A DNA stretch of 64,000 nt, from assembly GCA_965603825.1 (NCBI GenBank), contig CBFDEM010000029.1, forward strand, positions 62,001-126,000. Direction: 5' to 3'. This document shows, in pieces, positions 14,214-20,063 of this stretch; position 1 is the first letter of the stretch, and each line of letters begins with the position of its first letter. This DNA comes from Blepharisma stoltei ATCC 30299. Its lineage: Eukaryota; Protista; Ciliophora. A program made the position numbers and the translations under genes. The notes beneath the pieces are model-generated. The model had not been told where the DNA came from and made no database searches. It saw only the letters and a list, made by a program, of their open reading frames with translations.

Positions 14214-15179
14214 CTAAAATTCCCAATTTGAATATCTTGAAGAAAATAAATTGCTTGGCGCTTCCAAAGAAATTCGACTATTAACCCCTTGCATAAATGA
14301 TGGTAATGGACAATTAGAATATTTCTCTCTCCCTGAAAGTTTAGAAAAATCCAAATTAAGCTGTCTCTGTGTTACTAAACTATAATTGACATCATAAGGA
14401 TCTGGAATATGCTTCAAGTTTTCATCCTTTCTTCCAATTGATTTATCTAACGAAAATGACTTAATCAGCTTTTTCAAAAAAGGCTCTTTATTTGGTTTAT
14501 ACTCTGGTGCACAATCAGAAACTCTATAAAACTCTTTCCTTGCAAGTTGCTTCGATATATCTGGCACCGTTACTTTTTTGAATTTTGTACAAATTTCTGG
14601 TGATAAATTTTGCTGAACAAATCTTTGCTCATTTACAGATATATTATGAAATGATCCTCTCTTCAATTGCTTATTAAATGGAATTGCAGATTGTAAATGG
14701 CTATTGCTGAAATTTTTTTCCTTTTTAATTTTGTGTCTAAACTGCTTTTGAGCAGTTGTCGCTTGTCTTATTTCAATTTTAGTTTTCTTTAGTCTTGGAG
14801 ATTGTATATGTTTTTGAGTAATTTCAAAGCTCGGGTTATAATGGCCACATGGAGGAGCACAATTTTTACCTGAAATATTTCGATAATAGTCTTCACGGGT
14901 TTGTGCTCGAAAAGCTGGAGATAATTTAGGGATCTTTGGCGAATTGTCTTCGCTTACATCGTGAGCCATTTCTTCTTTTTTAATTAGCTCATTTATCATG
15001 AGAGATTCTTTTAGATCTTCATCTTCGTCTGGGGCGAAGCGAAACTGTTTTTGGCGAGATTTTCCACTAACTATTTCATCTCTCTGTCCTAAAATCATAA
15101 ATCTATCTGCACTGTTTTTTCCTATCCGGGAAATCATTTTGGGAGTAAATTTTTGTTTTGGCGTAAATGTATAAGACAT
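14214..15179 (-). CDS. Basic hypothetical protein with a SHIPPO/STPG-like motif (possible ciliary microtubule-associated protein)
   Basis: 321-aa ORF; APPCGHYNP and related P..Y.P/V.N motifs. Confidence 0.5.
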   Translation of the reverse strand: MSYTFTPKQKFTPKMISRIGKNSADRFMILGQRDEIVSGKSRQKQFRFAPDEDEDLKESLMINELIKKEEMAHDVSEDNSPKIPKLSPAFRAQTREDYYRNISGKNCAPPCGHYNPSFEITQKHIQSPRLKKTKIEIRQATTAQKQFRHKIKKEKNFSNSHLQSAIPFNKQLKRGSFHNISVNEQRFVQQNLSPEICTKFKKVTVPDISKQLARKEFYRVSDCAPEYKPNKEPFLKKLIKSFSLDKSIGRKDENLKHIPDPYDVNYSLVTQRQLNLDFSKLSGREKYSNCPLPSFMQGVNSRISLEAPSNLFSSRYSNWEF

Positions 15180-15645: not shown

Positions 15646-16005
15646 TCTTATAATTATTTATGTCATAAATAATGATAAGTCTATGACGATTTCAATTCTA
15701 ATTATGGGATTGTAGGAGTAATATAATAATTGTTACAATCGAAATGGAAAAGGTAAATCGCATAGGACCAAAATTATCAATTTTATTTATAAATTATAAA
15801 CAAAAGTATCATATACTATTATGCAATCAGATTATATCTCATTTCGTGATAACATGAAGCCCATTATTAAAAAACAACTATTTAATATTTGATTTTTAAG
15901 AAAAAATTAAAATCAAATGTTATTTATCTGATTACTTATAAATTATTTAACTTGCAAACTTGTTGCTATAAATAGTAATCATCCTTTCATTTTTGAATAA
16001 GTTAA

Positions 16006-17811
16006 ATGATTAAAAGGGTCATCGCAAACTTCGAGTCAATTTCATCAATGCTTCCGTCAAACCAAGATACTACTCCAAACATGACAAGCACAGAAATCAG
16101 CGACTCAACAGATGCTGCAGTTTTGTCGAAATATAAGAAAAAATTCATGAAATGCCTAAACAACTCTCTCATGCAATTGACTATTTCAGTCCTAATTATA
16201 ATTTACGCATCACTTGCTACAGCCTTAATTACCTTTGATGCAGATTTAGATGATGCAAAAATCTCATTACTAGCAATCGAACTTGGTCTGCTTGCTTTTT
16301 TCGTAGGTGAAACTTTATGCTTCGCAATAATTTCTCAAGGAAAAAATCTGTCAAATTGACTTGATTTGATTCTGCTCATAATCTCGATTTTGATCGTTTG
16401 TTTTCAAATAAATGATCCAGAGCTGAAATTCGGTGATTCGTGAAGGCTAAAATCTCTACTGTTCATCCTGAGGATTATTTTAATTAACCGTCGGCTATTT
16501 GAATTGAATACAATTTTTATCCAATTCAAAACCAGAAGAATGACCACACGCAAAATTTCAACAACTCATACAGAAAAAGTTATTGATATTTTAGAAACCA
16601 TAACAAATTCATTTCTGTGCACCAAGAATTATCCATTAAAAGAAACCTTGCAGTTATGTTTAGAGTCAATAGCAAGGGCCAAAGCAGAAGACTTTGGGCT
16701 TGACGCAACTACAGAAGCTGATAAATTAAGATCCACAGAGTGGCCCAAAAAATCCAGAAAAAATTCAAAGGTTAAACCAATGAGGCCTTCTATTGAAACT
16801 CAAGACAATGGAGGCTCAGTATTTAACTATGGGGAAGACTCTTTATCTTTTATTATTCCTACCACTATTTCTAAATACTGTGCCAAAGTGAATGAGCTTG
16901 ATTTTGATGTTTTTAACTTGAAGCGTGCTACAGATGGAAAAGAGCTTACCTCAGTCATCGTTTTCTTATTTTCTGAAAATGAATTGTTCGGCTATACAAA
17001 TATATCACCCCAGAGCTTGGTGATGTTTATCGATGCAATCCAAGAAGGATATCATTATGATAACTCTTATCACAACGCTACTCATGCTGCAGATGTTACT
17101 CAATTTTTTAATTTTTTATTAACGACTTGTGGGGGGAAAACAACTTGCAATTTAACCTATATGGAAATTGCAGCTTGCTACATAAGTGCAGCAATTCACG
17201 ATTTTGAGCATCCAGGTGTAAATAATGTTTTTCTAATCAATACTCAAGATCCACTTGCAATTTTATATAACGATAAAAGTGTTCTTGAAAACCATCATAT
17301 AGCATCTGCTTTTAAATGTGCACAAGAGCCAGACAAAAATATTTTTTCCAGCCTAACCAATGAAGAAAGAAAATCATTAAGATCCAAAATAATATCAATG
17401 GTATTGGCAACAGACATGTCAAGACATTTTAGTGATATTGCGAAGTATAAAACAAGATTCTCGATAGATACTCCTATAAAAGATGATATAGACAGACTTT
17501 TGACTATGGAAATGATGATGCATAGCTCAGATTTAGGGAACCCATGCAGGCCTTGGGAGCTGTGCAAACAATGGACACAGCTAATAGTTCAAGAGTTTTT
17601 CATTCAAGGAGACAAAGAAAGAGAACTTAATCTACCTATAAGTAATTTGTGTGATCGGTATACGGTGAACATACCGAAGTCGCAAATTGATTTTATTAGC
17701 TTTATTATTGAGCCGACTTTTAATACTCTTGCCTTGCTTTTGAAAAAGGTTACAGAAAATGCTATAGAAAATCTAAAGAATAATAAAGCAAATTGGGCCA
17801 ACGAGCTTTAA
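16006..17811 (+). CDS. Class I cyclic-nucleotide phosphodiesterase with an N-terminal 4-TM voltage-sensor-like domain, ~601 aa, 2 TGA-Trp
   Basis: TGA 16357 and 16441 link the two ORFs in frame. PDE motifs YHNATHAADV, HDFEHPGVNN, SVLENHH, LATDM, HSSDLGNP, QIDFI. Confidence 0.85.
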
Positions 17812-18104
17812 ATTGATAAATCTATTCACAGAGGAATATTAATTTTCTATTAGAATATTCAATTTTTTATTTTAACTGGCCACTTTTCTAAAATCTTACT
17901 CTTGGATTAATTAAATGATTTTAAGTATATCAACCTTTTTGTTTCAATAAGTCTTTTGCCTCATTTTTCAATATAGCCAGAGTGCTGCATCTCTTCTTGA
18001 ATATTTTGATTCTATCTATTTCTAATTACTATTTAAACAAAGTATATTAAATTATAAAACCATAACGCCTTATTGACCAAACTAATCTTTTTGTGAAATT
18101 AAAA

Positions 18105-20063
18105 ATGGGTCTTGAAGAGGAGAGGAAAAAGGTTACATTTTGTGTGGAAAATCTGACCAGATTTTTATATGCCCAAATCCTCCCTGATGTCTCATTTGAA
18201 CGAATAAGAGAACTTAAAGATAAAATATTAAAAATCCCAGACTTAAACTACACGTTGGAACGCTATCATGACACAAGAGAGGATGCTCTTAACAGAGGAA
18301 TCCGTCAAGGCTTAGCAATGAGGGCAATTTTCCAAAAAGAAAATTGCACAGAGTCCGAAAGAAGAATGGTCATGGGTTTTTTCCCTGAAATCACAGCAGC
18401 TGTTCTTCAGTACGATTTCTTCATGCCAGCCTTCAATCTTCAAGCAAGCGAAGAACAAAAAGCTCAATACAAAGAAAAATTAGACAATTTAGAAATTATT
18501 GGGTGTTACGCACAAACAGAACTTGGTCATGGCTCAAATGTGAGGGGAATTGAAACTCAAGCAATTTATGATAATCAAAGAGATGAATTTATTATGAATA
18601 GTCCAACAGTAACTTCACATAAGTGGTGGATTGGCGGCCTAGGTGTCAGTTGTTCTCATGCACTGGTCGTGGCCAAACTTATAATGAACCAGCAAGATAT
18701 GGGGCCGCACACCTTTTTTGTGCCTATTAGAGATATGAGAACACATGAGCCTTTGCCTGGAATTACAGTAGGAGATATAGGCCCTAAAATGGGGAATCCT
18801 TGTGCTGATAATGGATTTTTAAGGTTTGATAACTACAGAGTGCCAAAAAGTGTAATGCTAACTAGGTTTGCCAGAATCAATGACAAAGGAGAATATGAGA
18901 TCTTAGACCCAAATGCACTGAAAGTCTTATATTCATCACTTGTAAGAGCAAGAGTTAACTTATCAAGAGACGCCTGGCACTATCCAACAATTGCAGCAAC
19001 TATTGCTATAAGATATTCTCTTGTCAGAGAACAATTTCCAGACCCTGAAAACCCCCAGAGAGAGCGTAAGTTACTAGACTACCAAATCCAAAGATCAAAG
19101 TTATTTACAGTTCTAGCCAAAATCTATGCTATTGTGTTTGTTAGAGCTGTGCTAACTGAAAAATATAACGAATCTGAAAGAAGAATGAAGAATATGGATG
19201 GATCTTTATTAGGGGAACTTCATGCACTGAGTTCTTTATGCAAAGGATTTATCACAGCATCTGCGATCGAGTGCATTGAAGTCTGCAGAAGGTGTTGCGG
19301 AGGTCATGGCTATTCTATGTACTCAGGTATCCCTCATTTATATGCTTCTTATCTTCCATCTGCTACCTATGATGGAGATAACAGTATTTTGATCCTCCAA
19401 TCAGCCAGATATATGACCAACATTATCAAAAAAATTCATAAAGGTGAGCCAATCCCTGACAAATACGTCTTTTTAGCAAATCCTATTCCTCACTTATCCG
19501 GCGACCAAAATCCTGCCAGTCCAAGTTTCCATCAAGCTTGCTTCCAAGCAATTTCTTATGTGAGCCTTAATAATCTAGCCAAGAGAGAAGCTCAGTTTTT
19601 GAAAAATGGAATGAAAAAAGAAAAAATCTGGACAGAAATATTGCAGATTGAAGGAATAGAAGCAGCAGAAACATTTTTCCATACATCTGTGCATGAAGAT
19701 TTTATTAAAGGACTTTCTTTAATAACCGATCCAAATGCAAAGCAAGCAATAGAATATTTAAGACAAATCTATGCGATAACTCAGCTGGATAAGTATGCAG
19801 GAATTTTGATTAACTTGGGAGCAAGCCCTAACGTCATTGATAAGATGAAAGATGTATTATTGGAGGCTTTTGATAAAACTAGAGATAACGCAATTGGGCT
19901 AATCGAAGCGTTTGAAAAACCTGACGAAATGTTGTGCTCTGTGCTTGGAAAAAGAGATGGGAATGTGTATGAGAGTATGCTTTTCGCAGCTAAGCACTTA
20001 AATCCAATCAATAAGTCAAGCGTATATCCAGGGATCCAGAAATATTTAAGACCTAAGCTTTAA
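18105..20063 (+). CDS. ACOX: Peroxisomal acyl-CoA oxidase
   Basis: GCYAQTELGHGSNVRGIET, KWWIGGLG, AIRYS, RRCCGGHGY, TYDGDN; C-terminal PTS1-like PKL. Confidence 0.92.
   Translation: MGLEEERKKVTFCVENLTRFLYAQILPDVSFERIRELKDKILKIPDLNYTLERYHDTREDALNRGIRQGLAMRAIFQKENCTESERRMVMGFFPEITAAVLQYDFFMPAFNLQASEEQKAQYKEKLDNLEIIGCYAQTELGHGSNVRGIETQAIYDNQRDEFIMNSPTVTSHKWWIGGLGVSCSHALVVAKLIMNQQDMGPHTFFVPIRDMRTHEPLPGITVGDIGPKMGNPCADNGFLRFDNYRVPKSVMLTRFARINDKGEYEILDPNALKVLYSSLVRARVNLSRDAWHYPTIAATIAIRYSLVREQFPDPENPQRERKLLDYQIQRSKLFTVLAKIYAIVFVRAVLTEKYNESERRMKNMDGSLLGELHALSSLCKGFITASAIECIEVCRRCCGGHGYSMYSGIPHLYASYLPSATYDGDNSILILQSARYMTNIIKKIHKGEPIPDKYVFLANPIPHLSGDQNPASPSFHQACFQAISYVSLNNLAKREAQFLKNGMKKEKIWTEILQIEGIEAAETFFHTSVHEDFIKGLSLITDPNAKQAIEYLRQIYAITQLDKYAGILINLGASPNVIDKMKDVLLEAFDKTRDNAIGLIEAFEKPDEMLCSVLGKRDGNVYESMLFAAKHLNPINKSSVYPGIQKYLRPKL

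What the first reader, a model, noticed from the sequence alone, without database searches (positions are those of the whole stretch)
16006..17811. Voltage-sensor-like domain fused to a cyclic-nucleotide phosphodiesterase (candidate voltage-sensing PDE)
Seen: with TGA=Trp the N-terminus has four consecutive hydrophobic helices: S1 LMQLTISVLIIIYASLATALITF, S2 LLAIELGLLAFFVGETL, S3 NWLDLILLIISILIVCF, S4 WRLKSLLFILRIILINRRL. No pore helices follow, only a linker and a PDE domain with all metal-binding His/Asp motifs intact. Known: E...FxxE in S2, NxxD in S3 and basic residues in S4 are hallmarks of voltage-sensor domains. Pore-less VSD-enzyme fusions exist (voltage-sensing phosphatase), and ciliates have channel-like adenylyl cyclases and control ciliary beat through membrane potential and cAMP/cGMP. 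Inference: this could couple membrane voltage directly to cyclic-nucleotide breakdown. The S4 charge spacing is irregular, so it may sense pH or only anchor the enzyme. The fusion is invisible under the standard code because both TGAs fall in S3-S4.
Basis: partly seen in the sequence, partly recalled or inferred. Interest (0 to 1): 0.9.

Follow-up and report, generated by a model that had tools for sequence, protein, structure and literature searches.

The report
Voltage-sensor domain fused to phosphodiesterase
This ciliate gene really does join a four-helix voltage-sensor-type membrane domain, with no ion pore, to an intact cAMP/cGMP-degrading enzyme; it belongs to a large family I found no paper describing, which may let membrane voltage control second-messenger breakdown directly, although this copy has lost a key sensor charge.

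Summary
Window 16006-17811 (+) is one 601-codon gene with two in-frame TGA codons (118 and 146). The genome (41.46 Mb, 64 contigs) fits Blepharisma stoltei, which reads UGA as Trp. Gene-bounded, gapless contigs in four runs show one unspliced transcript.

Residues 355-585 are a complete class I PDE (E 1e-85) with all metal ligands. Residues 54-182 are four helices, S1 to S4. Pfam Ion_trans does not match this protein itself. However, 44 of 48 full-length relatives match it over the S1-S4 half only. The family profile hits solved sensors (TPTE2 9e-18, Hv1 7e-17). The AlphaFold model (pLDDT 84.7) matches the Ci-VSP sensor best (Z 12.6, 2.8 A over 121 residues). No pore follows.

The gene is not unique. 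The same fusion occurs in Tetrahymena, Ichthyophthirius, Protocruzia, Stentor, Euplotes, the dinoflagellate Oxyrrhis, the oomycete Aphanomyces and Platysulcus.

The family conserves the S2 Glu/Phe, the S3 Asp, two S4 arginines and a 50-residue post-S4 linker. This copy has Phe where 42 of 45 relatives have Arg.

Voltage control of hydrolysis is plausible for the family and doubtful for this copy. No paper describing such an enzyme was found. Apart from this stretch's own note, the scan's earlier notes hold no other voltage-sensor-PDE.

The parts
15981..17875 (+). Transcribed unit (longest gene-bounded contig)
   Evidence: four runs each give one gapless contig with no other letters (15981-17875, 16072-17933, 16016-17830, 16072-17867). 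The stretches just beside the gene (15669-15835, 18007-18173) are uncovered in all four runs. The neighbouring gene has 15-25 times the word depth. The record labels the runs as RNA only as a guess.
16006..17811 (+). Coding sequence: 601 codons plus TAA, no intron
16357..16359 (+). In-frame TGA, codon 118, read as Trp, at the start of S3
   Evidence: UGA = Trp in B. stoltei (PMC9942806).
16441..16443 (+). In-frame TGA, codon 146, read as Trp, first residue of S4
   Evidence: it aligns with a TGG-encoded Trp146 of P0002.
16165..16233 (+). S1 helix (residues 54-76)
16255..16332 (+). S2 helix (84-109) with E92, F99 and E102 (charge-transfer-centre pattern E, +7 F, +10 E)
   Evidence: In 45 relatives the counts are E/D 39, F 39, E 43.
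16348..16413 (+). S3 helix (115-136) with N117 and D120
   Evidence: D is present in 44 of 45 relatives.
16441..16551 (+). S4 helix (146-182), running on into the cytoplasm. It carries R147, K149, F153 (family Arg lost), R156, R162 and R163.
   Evidence: It is the best-conserved segment against P0002 (75% identity).
16552..16692 (+). Post-S4 helical linker (183-229), carrying a family-wide conserved motif of about 50 residues
   Evidence: No solved relative and no Pfam family.
16693..16860 (+). Low-confidence, probably disordered spacer (230-285)
   Evidence: pLDDT is about 40 over 227-278.
16861..17805 (+). Class I cyclic-nucleotide phosphodiesterase catalytic domain (286-600; Pfam match 355-585 = 17068-17760)
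   Evidence: pLDDT 96-99; H356, H360, H398, D399, D509, Q560, F563. Predicted symmetric dimer through residues 414-467.

Best explanation
The gene encodes a membrane-bound class I cyclic-nucleotide phosphodiesterase. Its N-terminal regulatory module is a pore-less voltage-sensor domain (S1-S4) homologous to those of voltage-gated channels, voltage-sensing phosphatases and Hv1.

Shown:
- One unspliced transcript covers both halves.
- The topology puts both ends in the cytoplasm.
- The S2/S3 charge-transfer centre is intact.
- S4 continues as one long helix into a conserved helical linker.
- The PDE has all catalytic residues.
- The protein belongs to a family found in ciliates, a dinoflagellate, an oomycete and Platysulcus.

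Inferred:
- In the family, S4 movement in the membrane field passes through the S4 extension and the conserved linker to a dimeric catalytic domain.
- Membrane potential would thereby set the rate of cAMP/cGMP hydrolysis, as voltage sets phosphatase activity in VSP.
- In ciliates this would sit beside voltage-linked cyclic-nucleotide control of ciliary beat.

This copy is a reduced-charge variant: Phe153 replaces the family's conserved Arg, while R147, R156 and R162/163 remain. Its S4 is nonetheless the most conserved segment within its own clade. The most likely reading is a weakened or shifted voltage response rather than none.

My odds: sensor-domain-PDE fusion 0.95; voltage regulation in the family 0.55; voltage regulation in this copy about 0.35-0.4.
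For: Gene and transcript.

PDE: PF00233 E 1.2e-85; metal and glutamine motifs present; pLDDT 96-99.

Homology of the N-terminal domain:
- P0001 aligns with P0003 over sensor plus linker at BLASTP E 9e-19, and P0003 hits Ion_trans at 5e-14.
- 44 of 48 full-length relatives hit PF00520, always within profile positions about 1-122 of 241, the S1-S4 half.
- The family profile hits Cav/Nav sensors per domain down to 2.7e-15, TPTE2 9c49 at 9.1e-18 and Hv1 3wkv at 7.1e-17.

Fold: the model has pLDDT 84.7. The Foldseek top hit is Ci-VSP 4g7v (TM by target 0.69), and the top of the list is mostly sensor domains. VIA-align gives Z 12.6, rmsd 2.8 A over 121 of 128 residues of Ci-VSP 4g80_S.

Topology: loop charges are +4, -3, +1, -2, +6.

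Selection on sensor residues across 45 relatives: E102 43, D120 44, F99 39, R at position 153 42, R156 44, R162 36.

The linker motif is conserved from ciliates to Aphanomyces and Platysulcus, which argues against a plain tether.

S4 is 75% identical to P0002, against 61% for the PDE domain.

Homodimer: score 0.72 with best control 0.01. The mark was reached by 21 of 30 proteins solved as pairs of one chain and by 0 of 23 solved as single chains. The runs agree in at least 17% of contacts and the partner's pLDDT is at least 74. The pass may be from memory of solved PDE dimers.
Against: - P0001 alone gives no Ion_trans hit at E <= 1 and no solved relative by phmmer.
- This copy has no RxxR pair in S4; the position that is Arg in 42 of 45 relatives is Phe.
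- Its closest relative, P0002, has also lost the S2 Glu (Lys there).
- The Stentor members have still poorer S4 helices, so sensor decay recurs in heterotrichs.
- Fold scores for four-helix bundles are not specific: a designed bundle reached Z 12.0, and Foldseek E-values were only 0.05 or worse.
- No gating charge, localisation or enzyme data exist.
- The predicted dimer interface lies in the catalytic domain, not in the S4 extension, so the coupling path is unknown.
Confidence: 0.5

Rival explanations
1. Relic sensor. The S1-S4 domain descends from a voltage sensor, but in this copy it serves only as a membrane anchor, a ciliary or cortical targeting signal, or an assembly scaffold. PDE activity would be voltage-independent and controlled by other means such as phosphorylation of the disordered spacer.
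For: Phe153 replaces the family Arg and no two S4 charges stand three apart. P0002 lost the S2 Glu, and the Stentor relatives keep one S4 Arg. Pfam does not recognise the domain in this copy. One close paralog in the same genome (L015) has no sensor at all yet sits inside the fusion clade, so the PDE can do without it.
Against: S4 is the most conserved segment between P0001 and P0002 (75%), and S3 is at 64%. E92, F99, E102 and D120, which have no role in a plain anchor, are all kept. The first helix of the linker motif is retained.
Confidence: 0.35
2. The sensor-type domain responds to something other than voltage (pH, lipid, a ligand in the S1-S4 crevice, membrane tension), or itself conducts protons or ions as Hv1 or omega-current mutants do. 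Such a signal or flux would be linked to cyclic-nucleotide breakdown.
For: The family profile scores the pore-less sensors TPTE2 and Hv1 about as high as, or slightly above, any single channel sensor (67.5 and 64.5 bits against at most 59.4). Loss of an S4 Arg can open a leak path in channel sensors (established knowledge, not tested here).
Against: There is no acidic residue in mid-S1 where Hv1 has its selectivity Asp (sequence). The hydrophobic Phe99 plug is kept. Nothing positive points to a ligand.
Confidence: 0.1
3. Artefact: two separate genes, a pseudogene, or TGA acting as a stop, so that only the 455-aa PDE is made.
For: Under the standard code the frame is broken twice. The depth of the contigs is low (about 10).
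Against: - Gapless contigs span both TGAs in four runs.
- UGA = Trp in this organism.
- TGA146 aligns with a TGG Trp in P0002.
- The whole N-terminus aligns with full-length relatives.
- The gene has clean boundaries against its neighbours.
Confidence: 0.02

Closest known systems
Voltage-sensing phosphatase (Ci-VSP / TPTE family)
   Same: A pore-less S1-S4 sensor is followed by a cytoplasmic enzyme, with S4 running on as a helix towards the enzyme. The best structural match of the model is the Ci-VSP sensor. The family profile hits human TPTE2 at E 9e-18.
   Different: The enzyme is a class I cyclic-nucleotide PDE, not a PTEN-like lipid phosphatase with a C2 domain. The linker is about 100-130 residues with its own conserved two-helix motif, not the short phosphoinositide-binding linker of VSP. 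This copy lacks the regular Arg ladder.
Voltage-gated proton channel Hv1
   Same: A single sensor domain without a pore and a long S4 extension. The profile hit to 3wkv is E 7e-17 and Z is 11.2.
   Different: No mid-S1 Asp. No evidence of a coiled-coil dimer through the S4 extension; the predicted dimer contacts lie in the PDE. It carries an enzyme.
Ion-channel-like adenylyl cyclase of Paramecium and other alveolates (from my own knowledge; not tested here)
   Same: An alveolate protein joins voltage-gated-channel-type membrane helices to a cyclic-nucleotide enzyme. It is a plausible physiological partner, with synthesis on one side and breakdown on the other.
   Different: That protein has S1-S6 with a pore region and a cyclase. 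This one has S1-S4 only and a phosphodiesterase. The cyclase matches in this genome did not coincide with the sensor matches.
Membrane-bound class I PDEs (mammalian PDE3, six-helix apicomplexan PDEs; PMC10865986)
   Same: An N-terminal transmembrane region precedes a class I catalytic domain.
   Different: Those membrane regions are described as anchors of unknown function with six helices. None is reported as a sensor-domain homolog, and the review contains neither 'voltage' nor 'ion channel'.
Euplotes 'adjacent' PDEase_I and Ion_trans genes (PMC8670190)
   Same: The paper notes that the two Pfam families are always next to each other in Euplotes. A Euplotes protein (P0051) falls in this family, with a sensor found by the family profile.
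   Different: The paper reads them as neighbouring, functionally associated genes, not as one fusion protein or a voltage-sensing enzyme.

Membership tests
Voltage-sensor domain (S1-S4 of Pfam Ion_trans PF00520) | Four transmembrane helices, N- and C-termini cytoplasmic | tested here: met
   AlphaFold helices 54-76, 84-109, 115-136, 146-182. Hydropathy and the positive-inside pattern +4/-3/+1/-2/+6 agree.
Voltage-sensor domain (S1-S4 of Pfam Ion_trans PF00520) | Significant sequence match to the family model | tested here: inconclusive
   P0001 alone has no PF00520 hit at E <= 1 and no PDB hit. By transitivity it is met: BLASTP 9e-19 to P0003, which scores 52.5 bits against the 25-bit cut-off. 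44 of 48 relatives match. The family profile hits TPTE2 at 9e-18.
Voltage-sensor domain (S1-S4 of Pfam Ion_trans PF00520) | Charge-transfer centre: S2 acid, Phe seven residues on, Glu ten residues on, and an S3 Asp | tested here: met
   E92, F99, E102 and D120 are present. They are conserved in 39-44 of 45 relatives.
Voltage-sensor domain (S1-S4 of Pfam Ion_trans PF00520) | S4 with basic residues at every third position (at least an RxxR pair) | tested here: not met
   This copy has R147, K149, R156, R162 and R163, with none three apart. Position 153 is Phe where 42 of 45 relatives have Arg. The feature is met in the family and in the two other copies of this genome.
Voltage-sensor domain (S1-S4 of Pfam Ion_trans PF00520) | Fold superposes on solved sensors | tested here: met
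   Z 12.6, 2.8 A over 121 residues on Ci-VSP, and Z 11-12 on Cav, Nav, TPC, CatSper and Hv1 sensors. Caveat: helical bundles reach such Z values by arrangement alone.
Voltage-sensor domain (S1-S4 of Pfam Ion_trans PF00520) | Gating-charge movement in response to voltage | not testable with these tools
   Needs electrophysiology.
Voltage-gated cation channel (full Ion_trans, S1-S6) | Pore module S5-P-S6 after S4 | tested here: not met
   No hydrophobic segment after residue 175. Ion_trans matches in relatives end at about profile position 120 of 241.
Class I 3',5'-cyclic-nucleotide phosphodiesterase (PF00233) | Full-length match and the His/Asp metal ligands, general-acid His, and invariant Gln and Phe clamp | tested here: met
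   E 1.2e-85 over profile positions 1-234 of 238. H356, H360, H398, D399, D509, Q560 and F563 are present.
Voltage-sensing phosphatase (VSP) | PTEN-like phosphatase and C2 domain after the sensor | tested here: not met
   The only cytoplasmic Pfam domain is PDEase_I.
Hv1 proton channel | Acidic selectivity residue in mid-S1 | tested here: not met
   S1 of P0001 and the family consensus have no mid-helix Asp or Glu.

The most novel reading that the evidence does not exclude
The sensor-PDE family would be a second natural class of voltage-sensing enzyme. Membrane potential would directly gate cAMP/cGMP hydrolysis in ciliates, dinoflagellates and oomycetes, an electrical-to-chemical transducer dating back to the common ancestor of stramenopiles and alveolates. 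The Blepharisma copy in this window would be a naturally charge-reduced variant whose S4 still moves, with a shifted or shallower voltage dependence.
Probability: 0.4. Interest if true: 0.92.

Novelty: new variant of a known kind. Interest (0 to 1): 0.78.

Why it matters
Only one enzyme class, the voltage-sensing phosphatases, is known to be driven directly by a voltage-sensor domain. A voltage-driven phosphodiesterase would link membrane potential to cAMP/cGMP without Ca2+ or channels in between.

It would help explain how swimming protists such as ciliates and oomycete zoospores turn electrical events into changes of ciliary or flagellar beat. It could also offer a compact, genetically encoded tool for lowering cyclic nucleotides by voltage.

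The family is large: an ESM Atlas cluster of 248 members, and 87 sensor-bearing sequences in the tree made here. Members sit in model organisms (Tetrahymena, Stentor) and in a crop pathogen genus (Aphanomyces), so the idea is directly testable.

In TGA = Trp ciliates the fusion is hidden from standard gene callers. Several database relatives begin inside S3 or S4, which fits such truncation.

Tried and rejected
- Pfam on the three stop-free pieces and on P0001 gave no Ion_trans hit. phmmer of residues 40-200 against PDB sequences gave only a chance hit at E 0.6. Homology had to be shown through relatives.
- Foldseek E-values were weak (best 0.049). I relied on the make-up of the hit list and on VIA-align Z values, with their helical-bundle caveat.
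- The post-S4 linker profile found no solved relative (best E 0.46) and no Pfam family.
- Literature: six phrases of the type 'voltage-dependent/gated/activated/sensitive/regulated phosphodiesterase' and 'VSD-PDE' gave 0 papers. 'Voltage-sensing phosphodiesterase' gave 0 occurrences. Searches pairing sensor terms with PDE, ciliates, dinoflagellates and oomycetes gave nothing relevant except the Euplotes adjacency remark. Subscription journals are not covered.
- None of the four runs is on record as RNA. The RNA reading rests on contigs ending at gene borders and on depths that differ between neighbouring genes.
- The monophyly of the fusion clade has weak support at its base (SH-aLRT 57). I did not run an AU test, so a single origin is compatible with the data, not shown.
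- An earlier scan note about voltage-sensor adenylyl cyclases in this genome could not be confirmed here: the cyclase matches do not coincide with the sensor matches.
- Substrate preference (cAMP or cGMP) was not assigned. The nearest animal families by score are PDE4 and PDE1, which is not decisive.
Full report
**1. The sequence**

Window 16006-17811 (+) translates to 601 codons ending in TAA, with in-frame TGA at codons 118 and 146. The window's assembly has 41,464,486 bases in 64 contigs, is about 33% G+C here, and carries in-frame TGA in many conserved PDE domains. This fits the published macronuclear genome of Blepharisma stoltei ATCC 30299: 41 Mbp, 64 telomere-to-telomere contigs, UGA = Trp, and tiny 15-16 bp introns (PMC9942806). 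The identification of the organism is my inference.

The protein with Trp at both places is on record as P0001. Codon 146 (TGA) aligns with a TGG Trp in the closest relative, P0002. That relative's own gene has three other in-frame TGA codons and a TAA stop.

**2. One gene, one transcript**

Contigs of four public runs, all from one study, each cover the gene with a single gapless piece without any differing letter: 15981-17875, 16072-17933, 16016-17830 and 16072-17867. The stretches just beside the gene (15669-15835 and 18007-18173) are empty in all four. The next gene has 15-25 times the word depth.

That pattern is what transcript assemblies give, although the record calls these runs RNA only as a guess. 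Both TGA codons lie inside the contigs and no joint falls within the gene, so there is no intron and no split between the two halves. The neighbouring open frames end at 15179 (- strand) and begin at 18105 (+ strand).

**3. The enzyme half**

PDEase_I (PF00233) matches residues 355-585 at E 1.2e-85 over profile positions 1-234 of 238. The following are all present and are invariant or nearly so among 48 relatives:
- the general-acid and metal-binding residues H356, H360, H398, D399 and D509;
- the substrate-clamping Q560 and F563.

The AlphaFold2 model has pLDDT 96-99 here. A two-copy prediction of residues 146-601 gave a score of 0.72 with a best control of 0.01. The mark was reached by 21 of 30 proteins solved as pairs of one chain and by 0 of 23 solved as single chains. 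The runs agree in at least 17% of contacts and the partner's pLDDT is at least 74. The symmetric interface lies at residues 414-467. Since PDE catalytic dimers have been solved, this pass may be from memory. It shows likeness to dimeric PDEs, not that this copy binds.

**4. The membrane half**

Neither the stop-free pieces nor P0001 itself hit Ion_trans, and phmmer against PDB sequences found nothing. Homology shows through relatives.
- P0001 residues 40-334 align with P0003 at BLASTP E 9e-19. P0003 hits PF00520 at 5e-14, 52.5 bits against a 25-bit cut-off.
- Of 48 aligned full-length relatives, 47 hit PDEase_I and 44 hit Ion_trans. The Ion_trans match always falls within profile positions about 1-122 of 241, the S1-S4 half.
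- A profile of 22 N-terminal regions hits the individual sensor domains of Cav and Nav channels (down to 2.7e-15 per domain), human TPTE2 (9c49, 9.1e-18, 67.5 bits) and the Hv1 chimera 3wkv (7.1e-17).
- The AlphaFold2 model of residues 40-210, built on 45 sequences, has mean pLDDT 84.7. Its best Foldseek match is the Ci-VSP sensor 4g7v (TM by target 0.69, probability 1.00, E 0.049), and the top of the list is mostly sensor domains.
- VIA-align gives Z 12.6, rmsd 2.8 A over 121 of 128 residues for Ci-VSP 4g80_S. It gives Z 11-12 for the sensors of TPC1, Cav1.2, CatSper, Nav, NALCN and Hv1. A designed helical bundle also reached Z 12.0, so fold alone would not suffice. Sequence and fold together do.

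In the full-length model the helices are S1 54-76, S2 84-109, S3 115-136 and S4 146-182. Helical linker segments follow at 188-229, then a low-confidence spacer at 227-278, then the PDE from 286. No segment after residue 175 is hydrophobic enough for S5 or S6. The loop charges (+4, -3, +1, -2, +6) put both ends, and therefore the PDE, in the cytoplasm.

**5. The sensor residues**

Counts across 45 family members:

| Position in P0001 | Family | This copy |
|---|---|---|
| S2 outer acid (92) | E/D in 39 | E92 |
| S2 Phe (99) | F in 39 | F99 |
| S2 inner Glu (102) | E in 43 | E102 |
| S3 Asp (120) | D in 44 | D120 |
| S4 position 153 | R in 42 | F153 |
| S4 position 156 | R in 44 | R156 |
| S4 position 162 | R in 36 | R162 |
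| S4 position 163 | K/R in 43 | R163 |

Aligned to Cav3.2 domain IV, the family's two central arginines stand at that channel's third and fourth S4 charges. The outer and inner basic residues stand at its first and sixth.

P0001 therefore keeps the counter-charges and three S4 charges, but has Phe at 153, and no two of its basic residues are three apart. P0002 shares this loss and has also lost the S2 Glu. The Stentor members are poorer still.

Against simple decay, S4 is the most conserved segment between P0001 and P0002 (75% identity). S3 follows at 64%, and the PDE domain is at 61%.

**6. The family**

This genome has at least 66 PDE domains, but only three lie downstream of a sensor: this gene, one on C21 and one on C58. 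The other two have a regular S4 (three arginines spaced by three, plus an inner basic pair). They also have a long N-terminal extension with extra hydrophobic segments and a Cys-rich stretch.

An exhaustive profile search found 341 cluster representatives at E <= 1e-30. The best 150 are single-sensor proteins of about 560-1060 residues whose match runs through the linker, mixed with four-domain channels.

Named members come from:
- Tetrahymena, Ichthyophthirius, Stentor and Euplotes;
- Protocruzia and the dinoflagellate Oxyrrhis marina;
- the stramenopile Platysulcus tardus and the oomycete Aphanomyces euteiches.

The last three pass the Pfam cut-off for both domains. An ESM Atlas cluster of 248 members, mostly ciliate, carries PF00233 in 100% and PF00520 in 73% of members.

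In a tree of 142 catalytic domains, all 87 sensor-bearing sequences fall on one side, together with 17 mostly truncated sequences and one sensor-less Blepharisma paralog (L015). Animal PDE1 and PDE4 and 28 sensor-less Blepharisma paralogs fall on the other side. The basal split has weak support, SH-aLRT 57. One old fusion with occasional loss is compatible with the tree but not proven.

Several shorter database relatives begin inside S3 or S4. This fits gene models cut short at the N-terminus, as happens to this gene under the standard code.

**7. The linker**

Between S4 and the catalytic domain the family shares a two-helix motif of about 50 residues: roughly [ST]-P-x-E-x-V-x-x-I-L, then about 15 residues, then L-x-W-x-I-x-x-I-x-x-x-K-L-Y-E. 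It is recognisable from ciliates to Aphanomyces and Platysulcus. It has no Pfam family and no solved relative. P0001 keeps the first helix well and the second only in part. A plain tether would not be conserved over such distances, so this is the best indirect sign that sensor and enzyme are functionally coupled.

**8. Mechanism**

Shown:
- the architecture, the single transcript and the topology;
- intact catalytic residues;
- conserved sensor residues in the family;
- the continuous S4 helix and the conserved linker.

Inferred:
- S4 displacement in the field is passed through its cytoplasmic extension and the linker to a dimeric PDE.
- Voltage thereby sets cyclic-nucleotide hydrolysis. This resembles VSP, where S4 extends towards the enzyme (PMC9245683, seen).
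- In ciliates, where swimming depends on membrane potential and on cAMP/cGMP (PMC2115034, listed), such an enzyme would shape or end cyclic-nucleotide signals with voltage.

For this copy I put the chance of real voltage dependence at 0.35-0.4. A voltage-insensitive relic is the main rival at 0.35.

**9. Comparison and novelty**

The protein works like, but is not a member of, the VSP family: its enzyme is different. It is not Hv1, because it lacks the mid-S1 acid. It is not a channel, because it has no pore.

The domain pair is visible in public databases. In 8.4 million full texts, however, I found no description of a voltage-sensor-PDE protein. One paper noted that PDEase_I and Ion_trans are 'always adjacent' in Euplotes and read them as neighbouring genes (PMC8670190). 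A review of apicomplexan PDEs mentions only transmembrane helices. Subscription literature was not searchable.

I rate it a new variant of a known kind, namely sensor-domain-enzyme fusions. The family-level interest is high. The window's copy is an atypical, charge-poor member.

**10. Earlier notes of this scan**

Apart from this same stretch, the earlier notes held no other voltage-sensor-PDE. One note on voltage-sensor adenylyl cyclases elsewhere in the genome prompted, which did not confirm it with my sensor matches.

Noticed in passing
L031:386-3322 (G000:C21:726685-729621) and L032:207-2996 (G000:C58:219006-221795): The two other sensor-PDE genes of this genome have open frames of 979 and 930 codons. 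Each has a regular S4 (three Arg spaced by three, plus an inner basic pair). Each also has an N-terminal extension of about 340-380 residues with extra hydrophobic segments and a Cys-rich stretch that has no Pfam match in the long database relatives P0181 and P0239. The gene starts were not verified.
   Followed up: partly
G000:C58:216392-218422 (+), just upstream of L032: A gene with two cyclase domains (PF00211, E about 1e-45) ends less than 1 kb before the open frame of the C58 sensor-PDE paralog. Another two-domain cyclase (C4:773839-775848) lies 4 kb from the sensor-less close paralog L015. Cyclase and PDE genes may be clustered.
   Followed up: no
L015 (G000:C4:769172-769867, - strand): This PDE paralog has the best score against the fusion family's catalytic profile (379.9 bits) and branches inside the fusion clade, but no sensor lies within 1.5 kb upstream. 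It looks like a secondary loss of the sensor.
   Followed up: partly
L003, L006-L008, L013, L016, L017, L022-L024, L030 (locus position about 1480-1483): In at least eleven Blepharisma PDE paralogs the open frame, read with TGA = Trp, begins at the same point: catalytic-profile position 63-64. A TAA or TAG stands just before it. This suggests a tiny intron at a conserved position.
   Followed up: no
window 18105-20063 (+): The downstream gene is covered by contigs only from 18273 on, at word depths of 156-271. The true start or 5' end may therefore lie later than the first ATG of the open frame.
   Followed up: no
P0061, P0063 (Stentor coeruleus), P0051 (Euplotes crassus): These annotated 'phosphodiesterases' carry an N-terminal sensor-type domain that Pfam misses but the family profile finds (27-52 bits). 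The Stentor S4 keeps only one Arg. The Euplotes case probably explains the 'adjacent Ion_trans and PDEase_I genes' of PMC8670190.
   Followed up: partly
window 16666-16685 and 18984-19007: A 772-base contig of very high depth (350-660) in three runs shares only 20-24 bases with each of these two places. It is most likely a chance or low-complexity match from another transcript.
   Followed up: no
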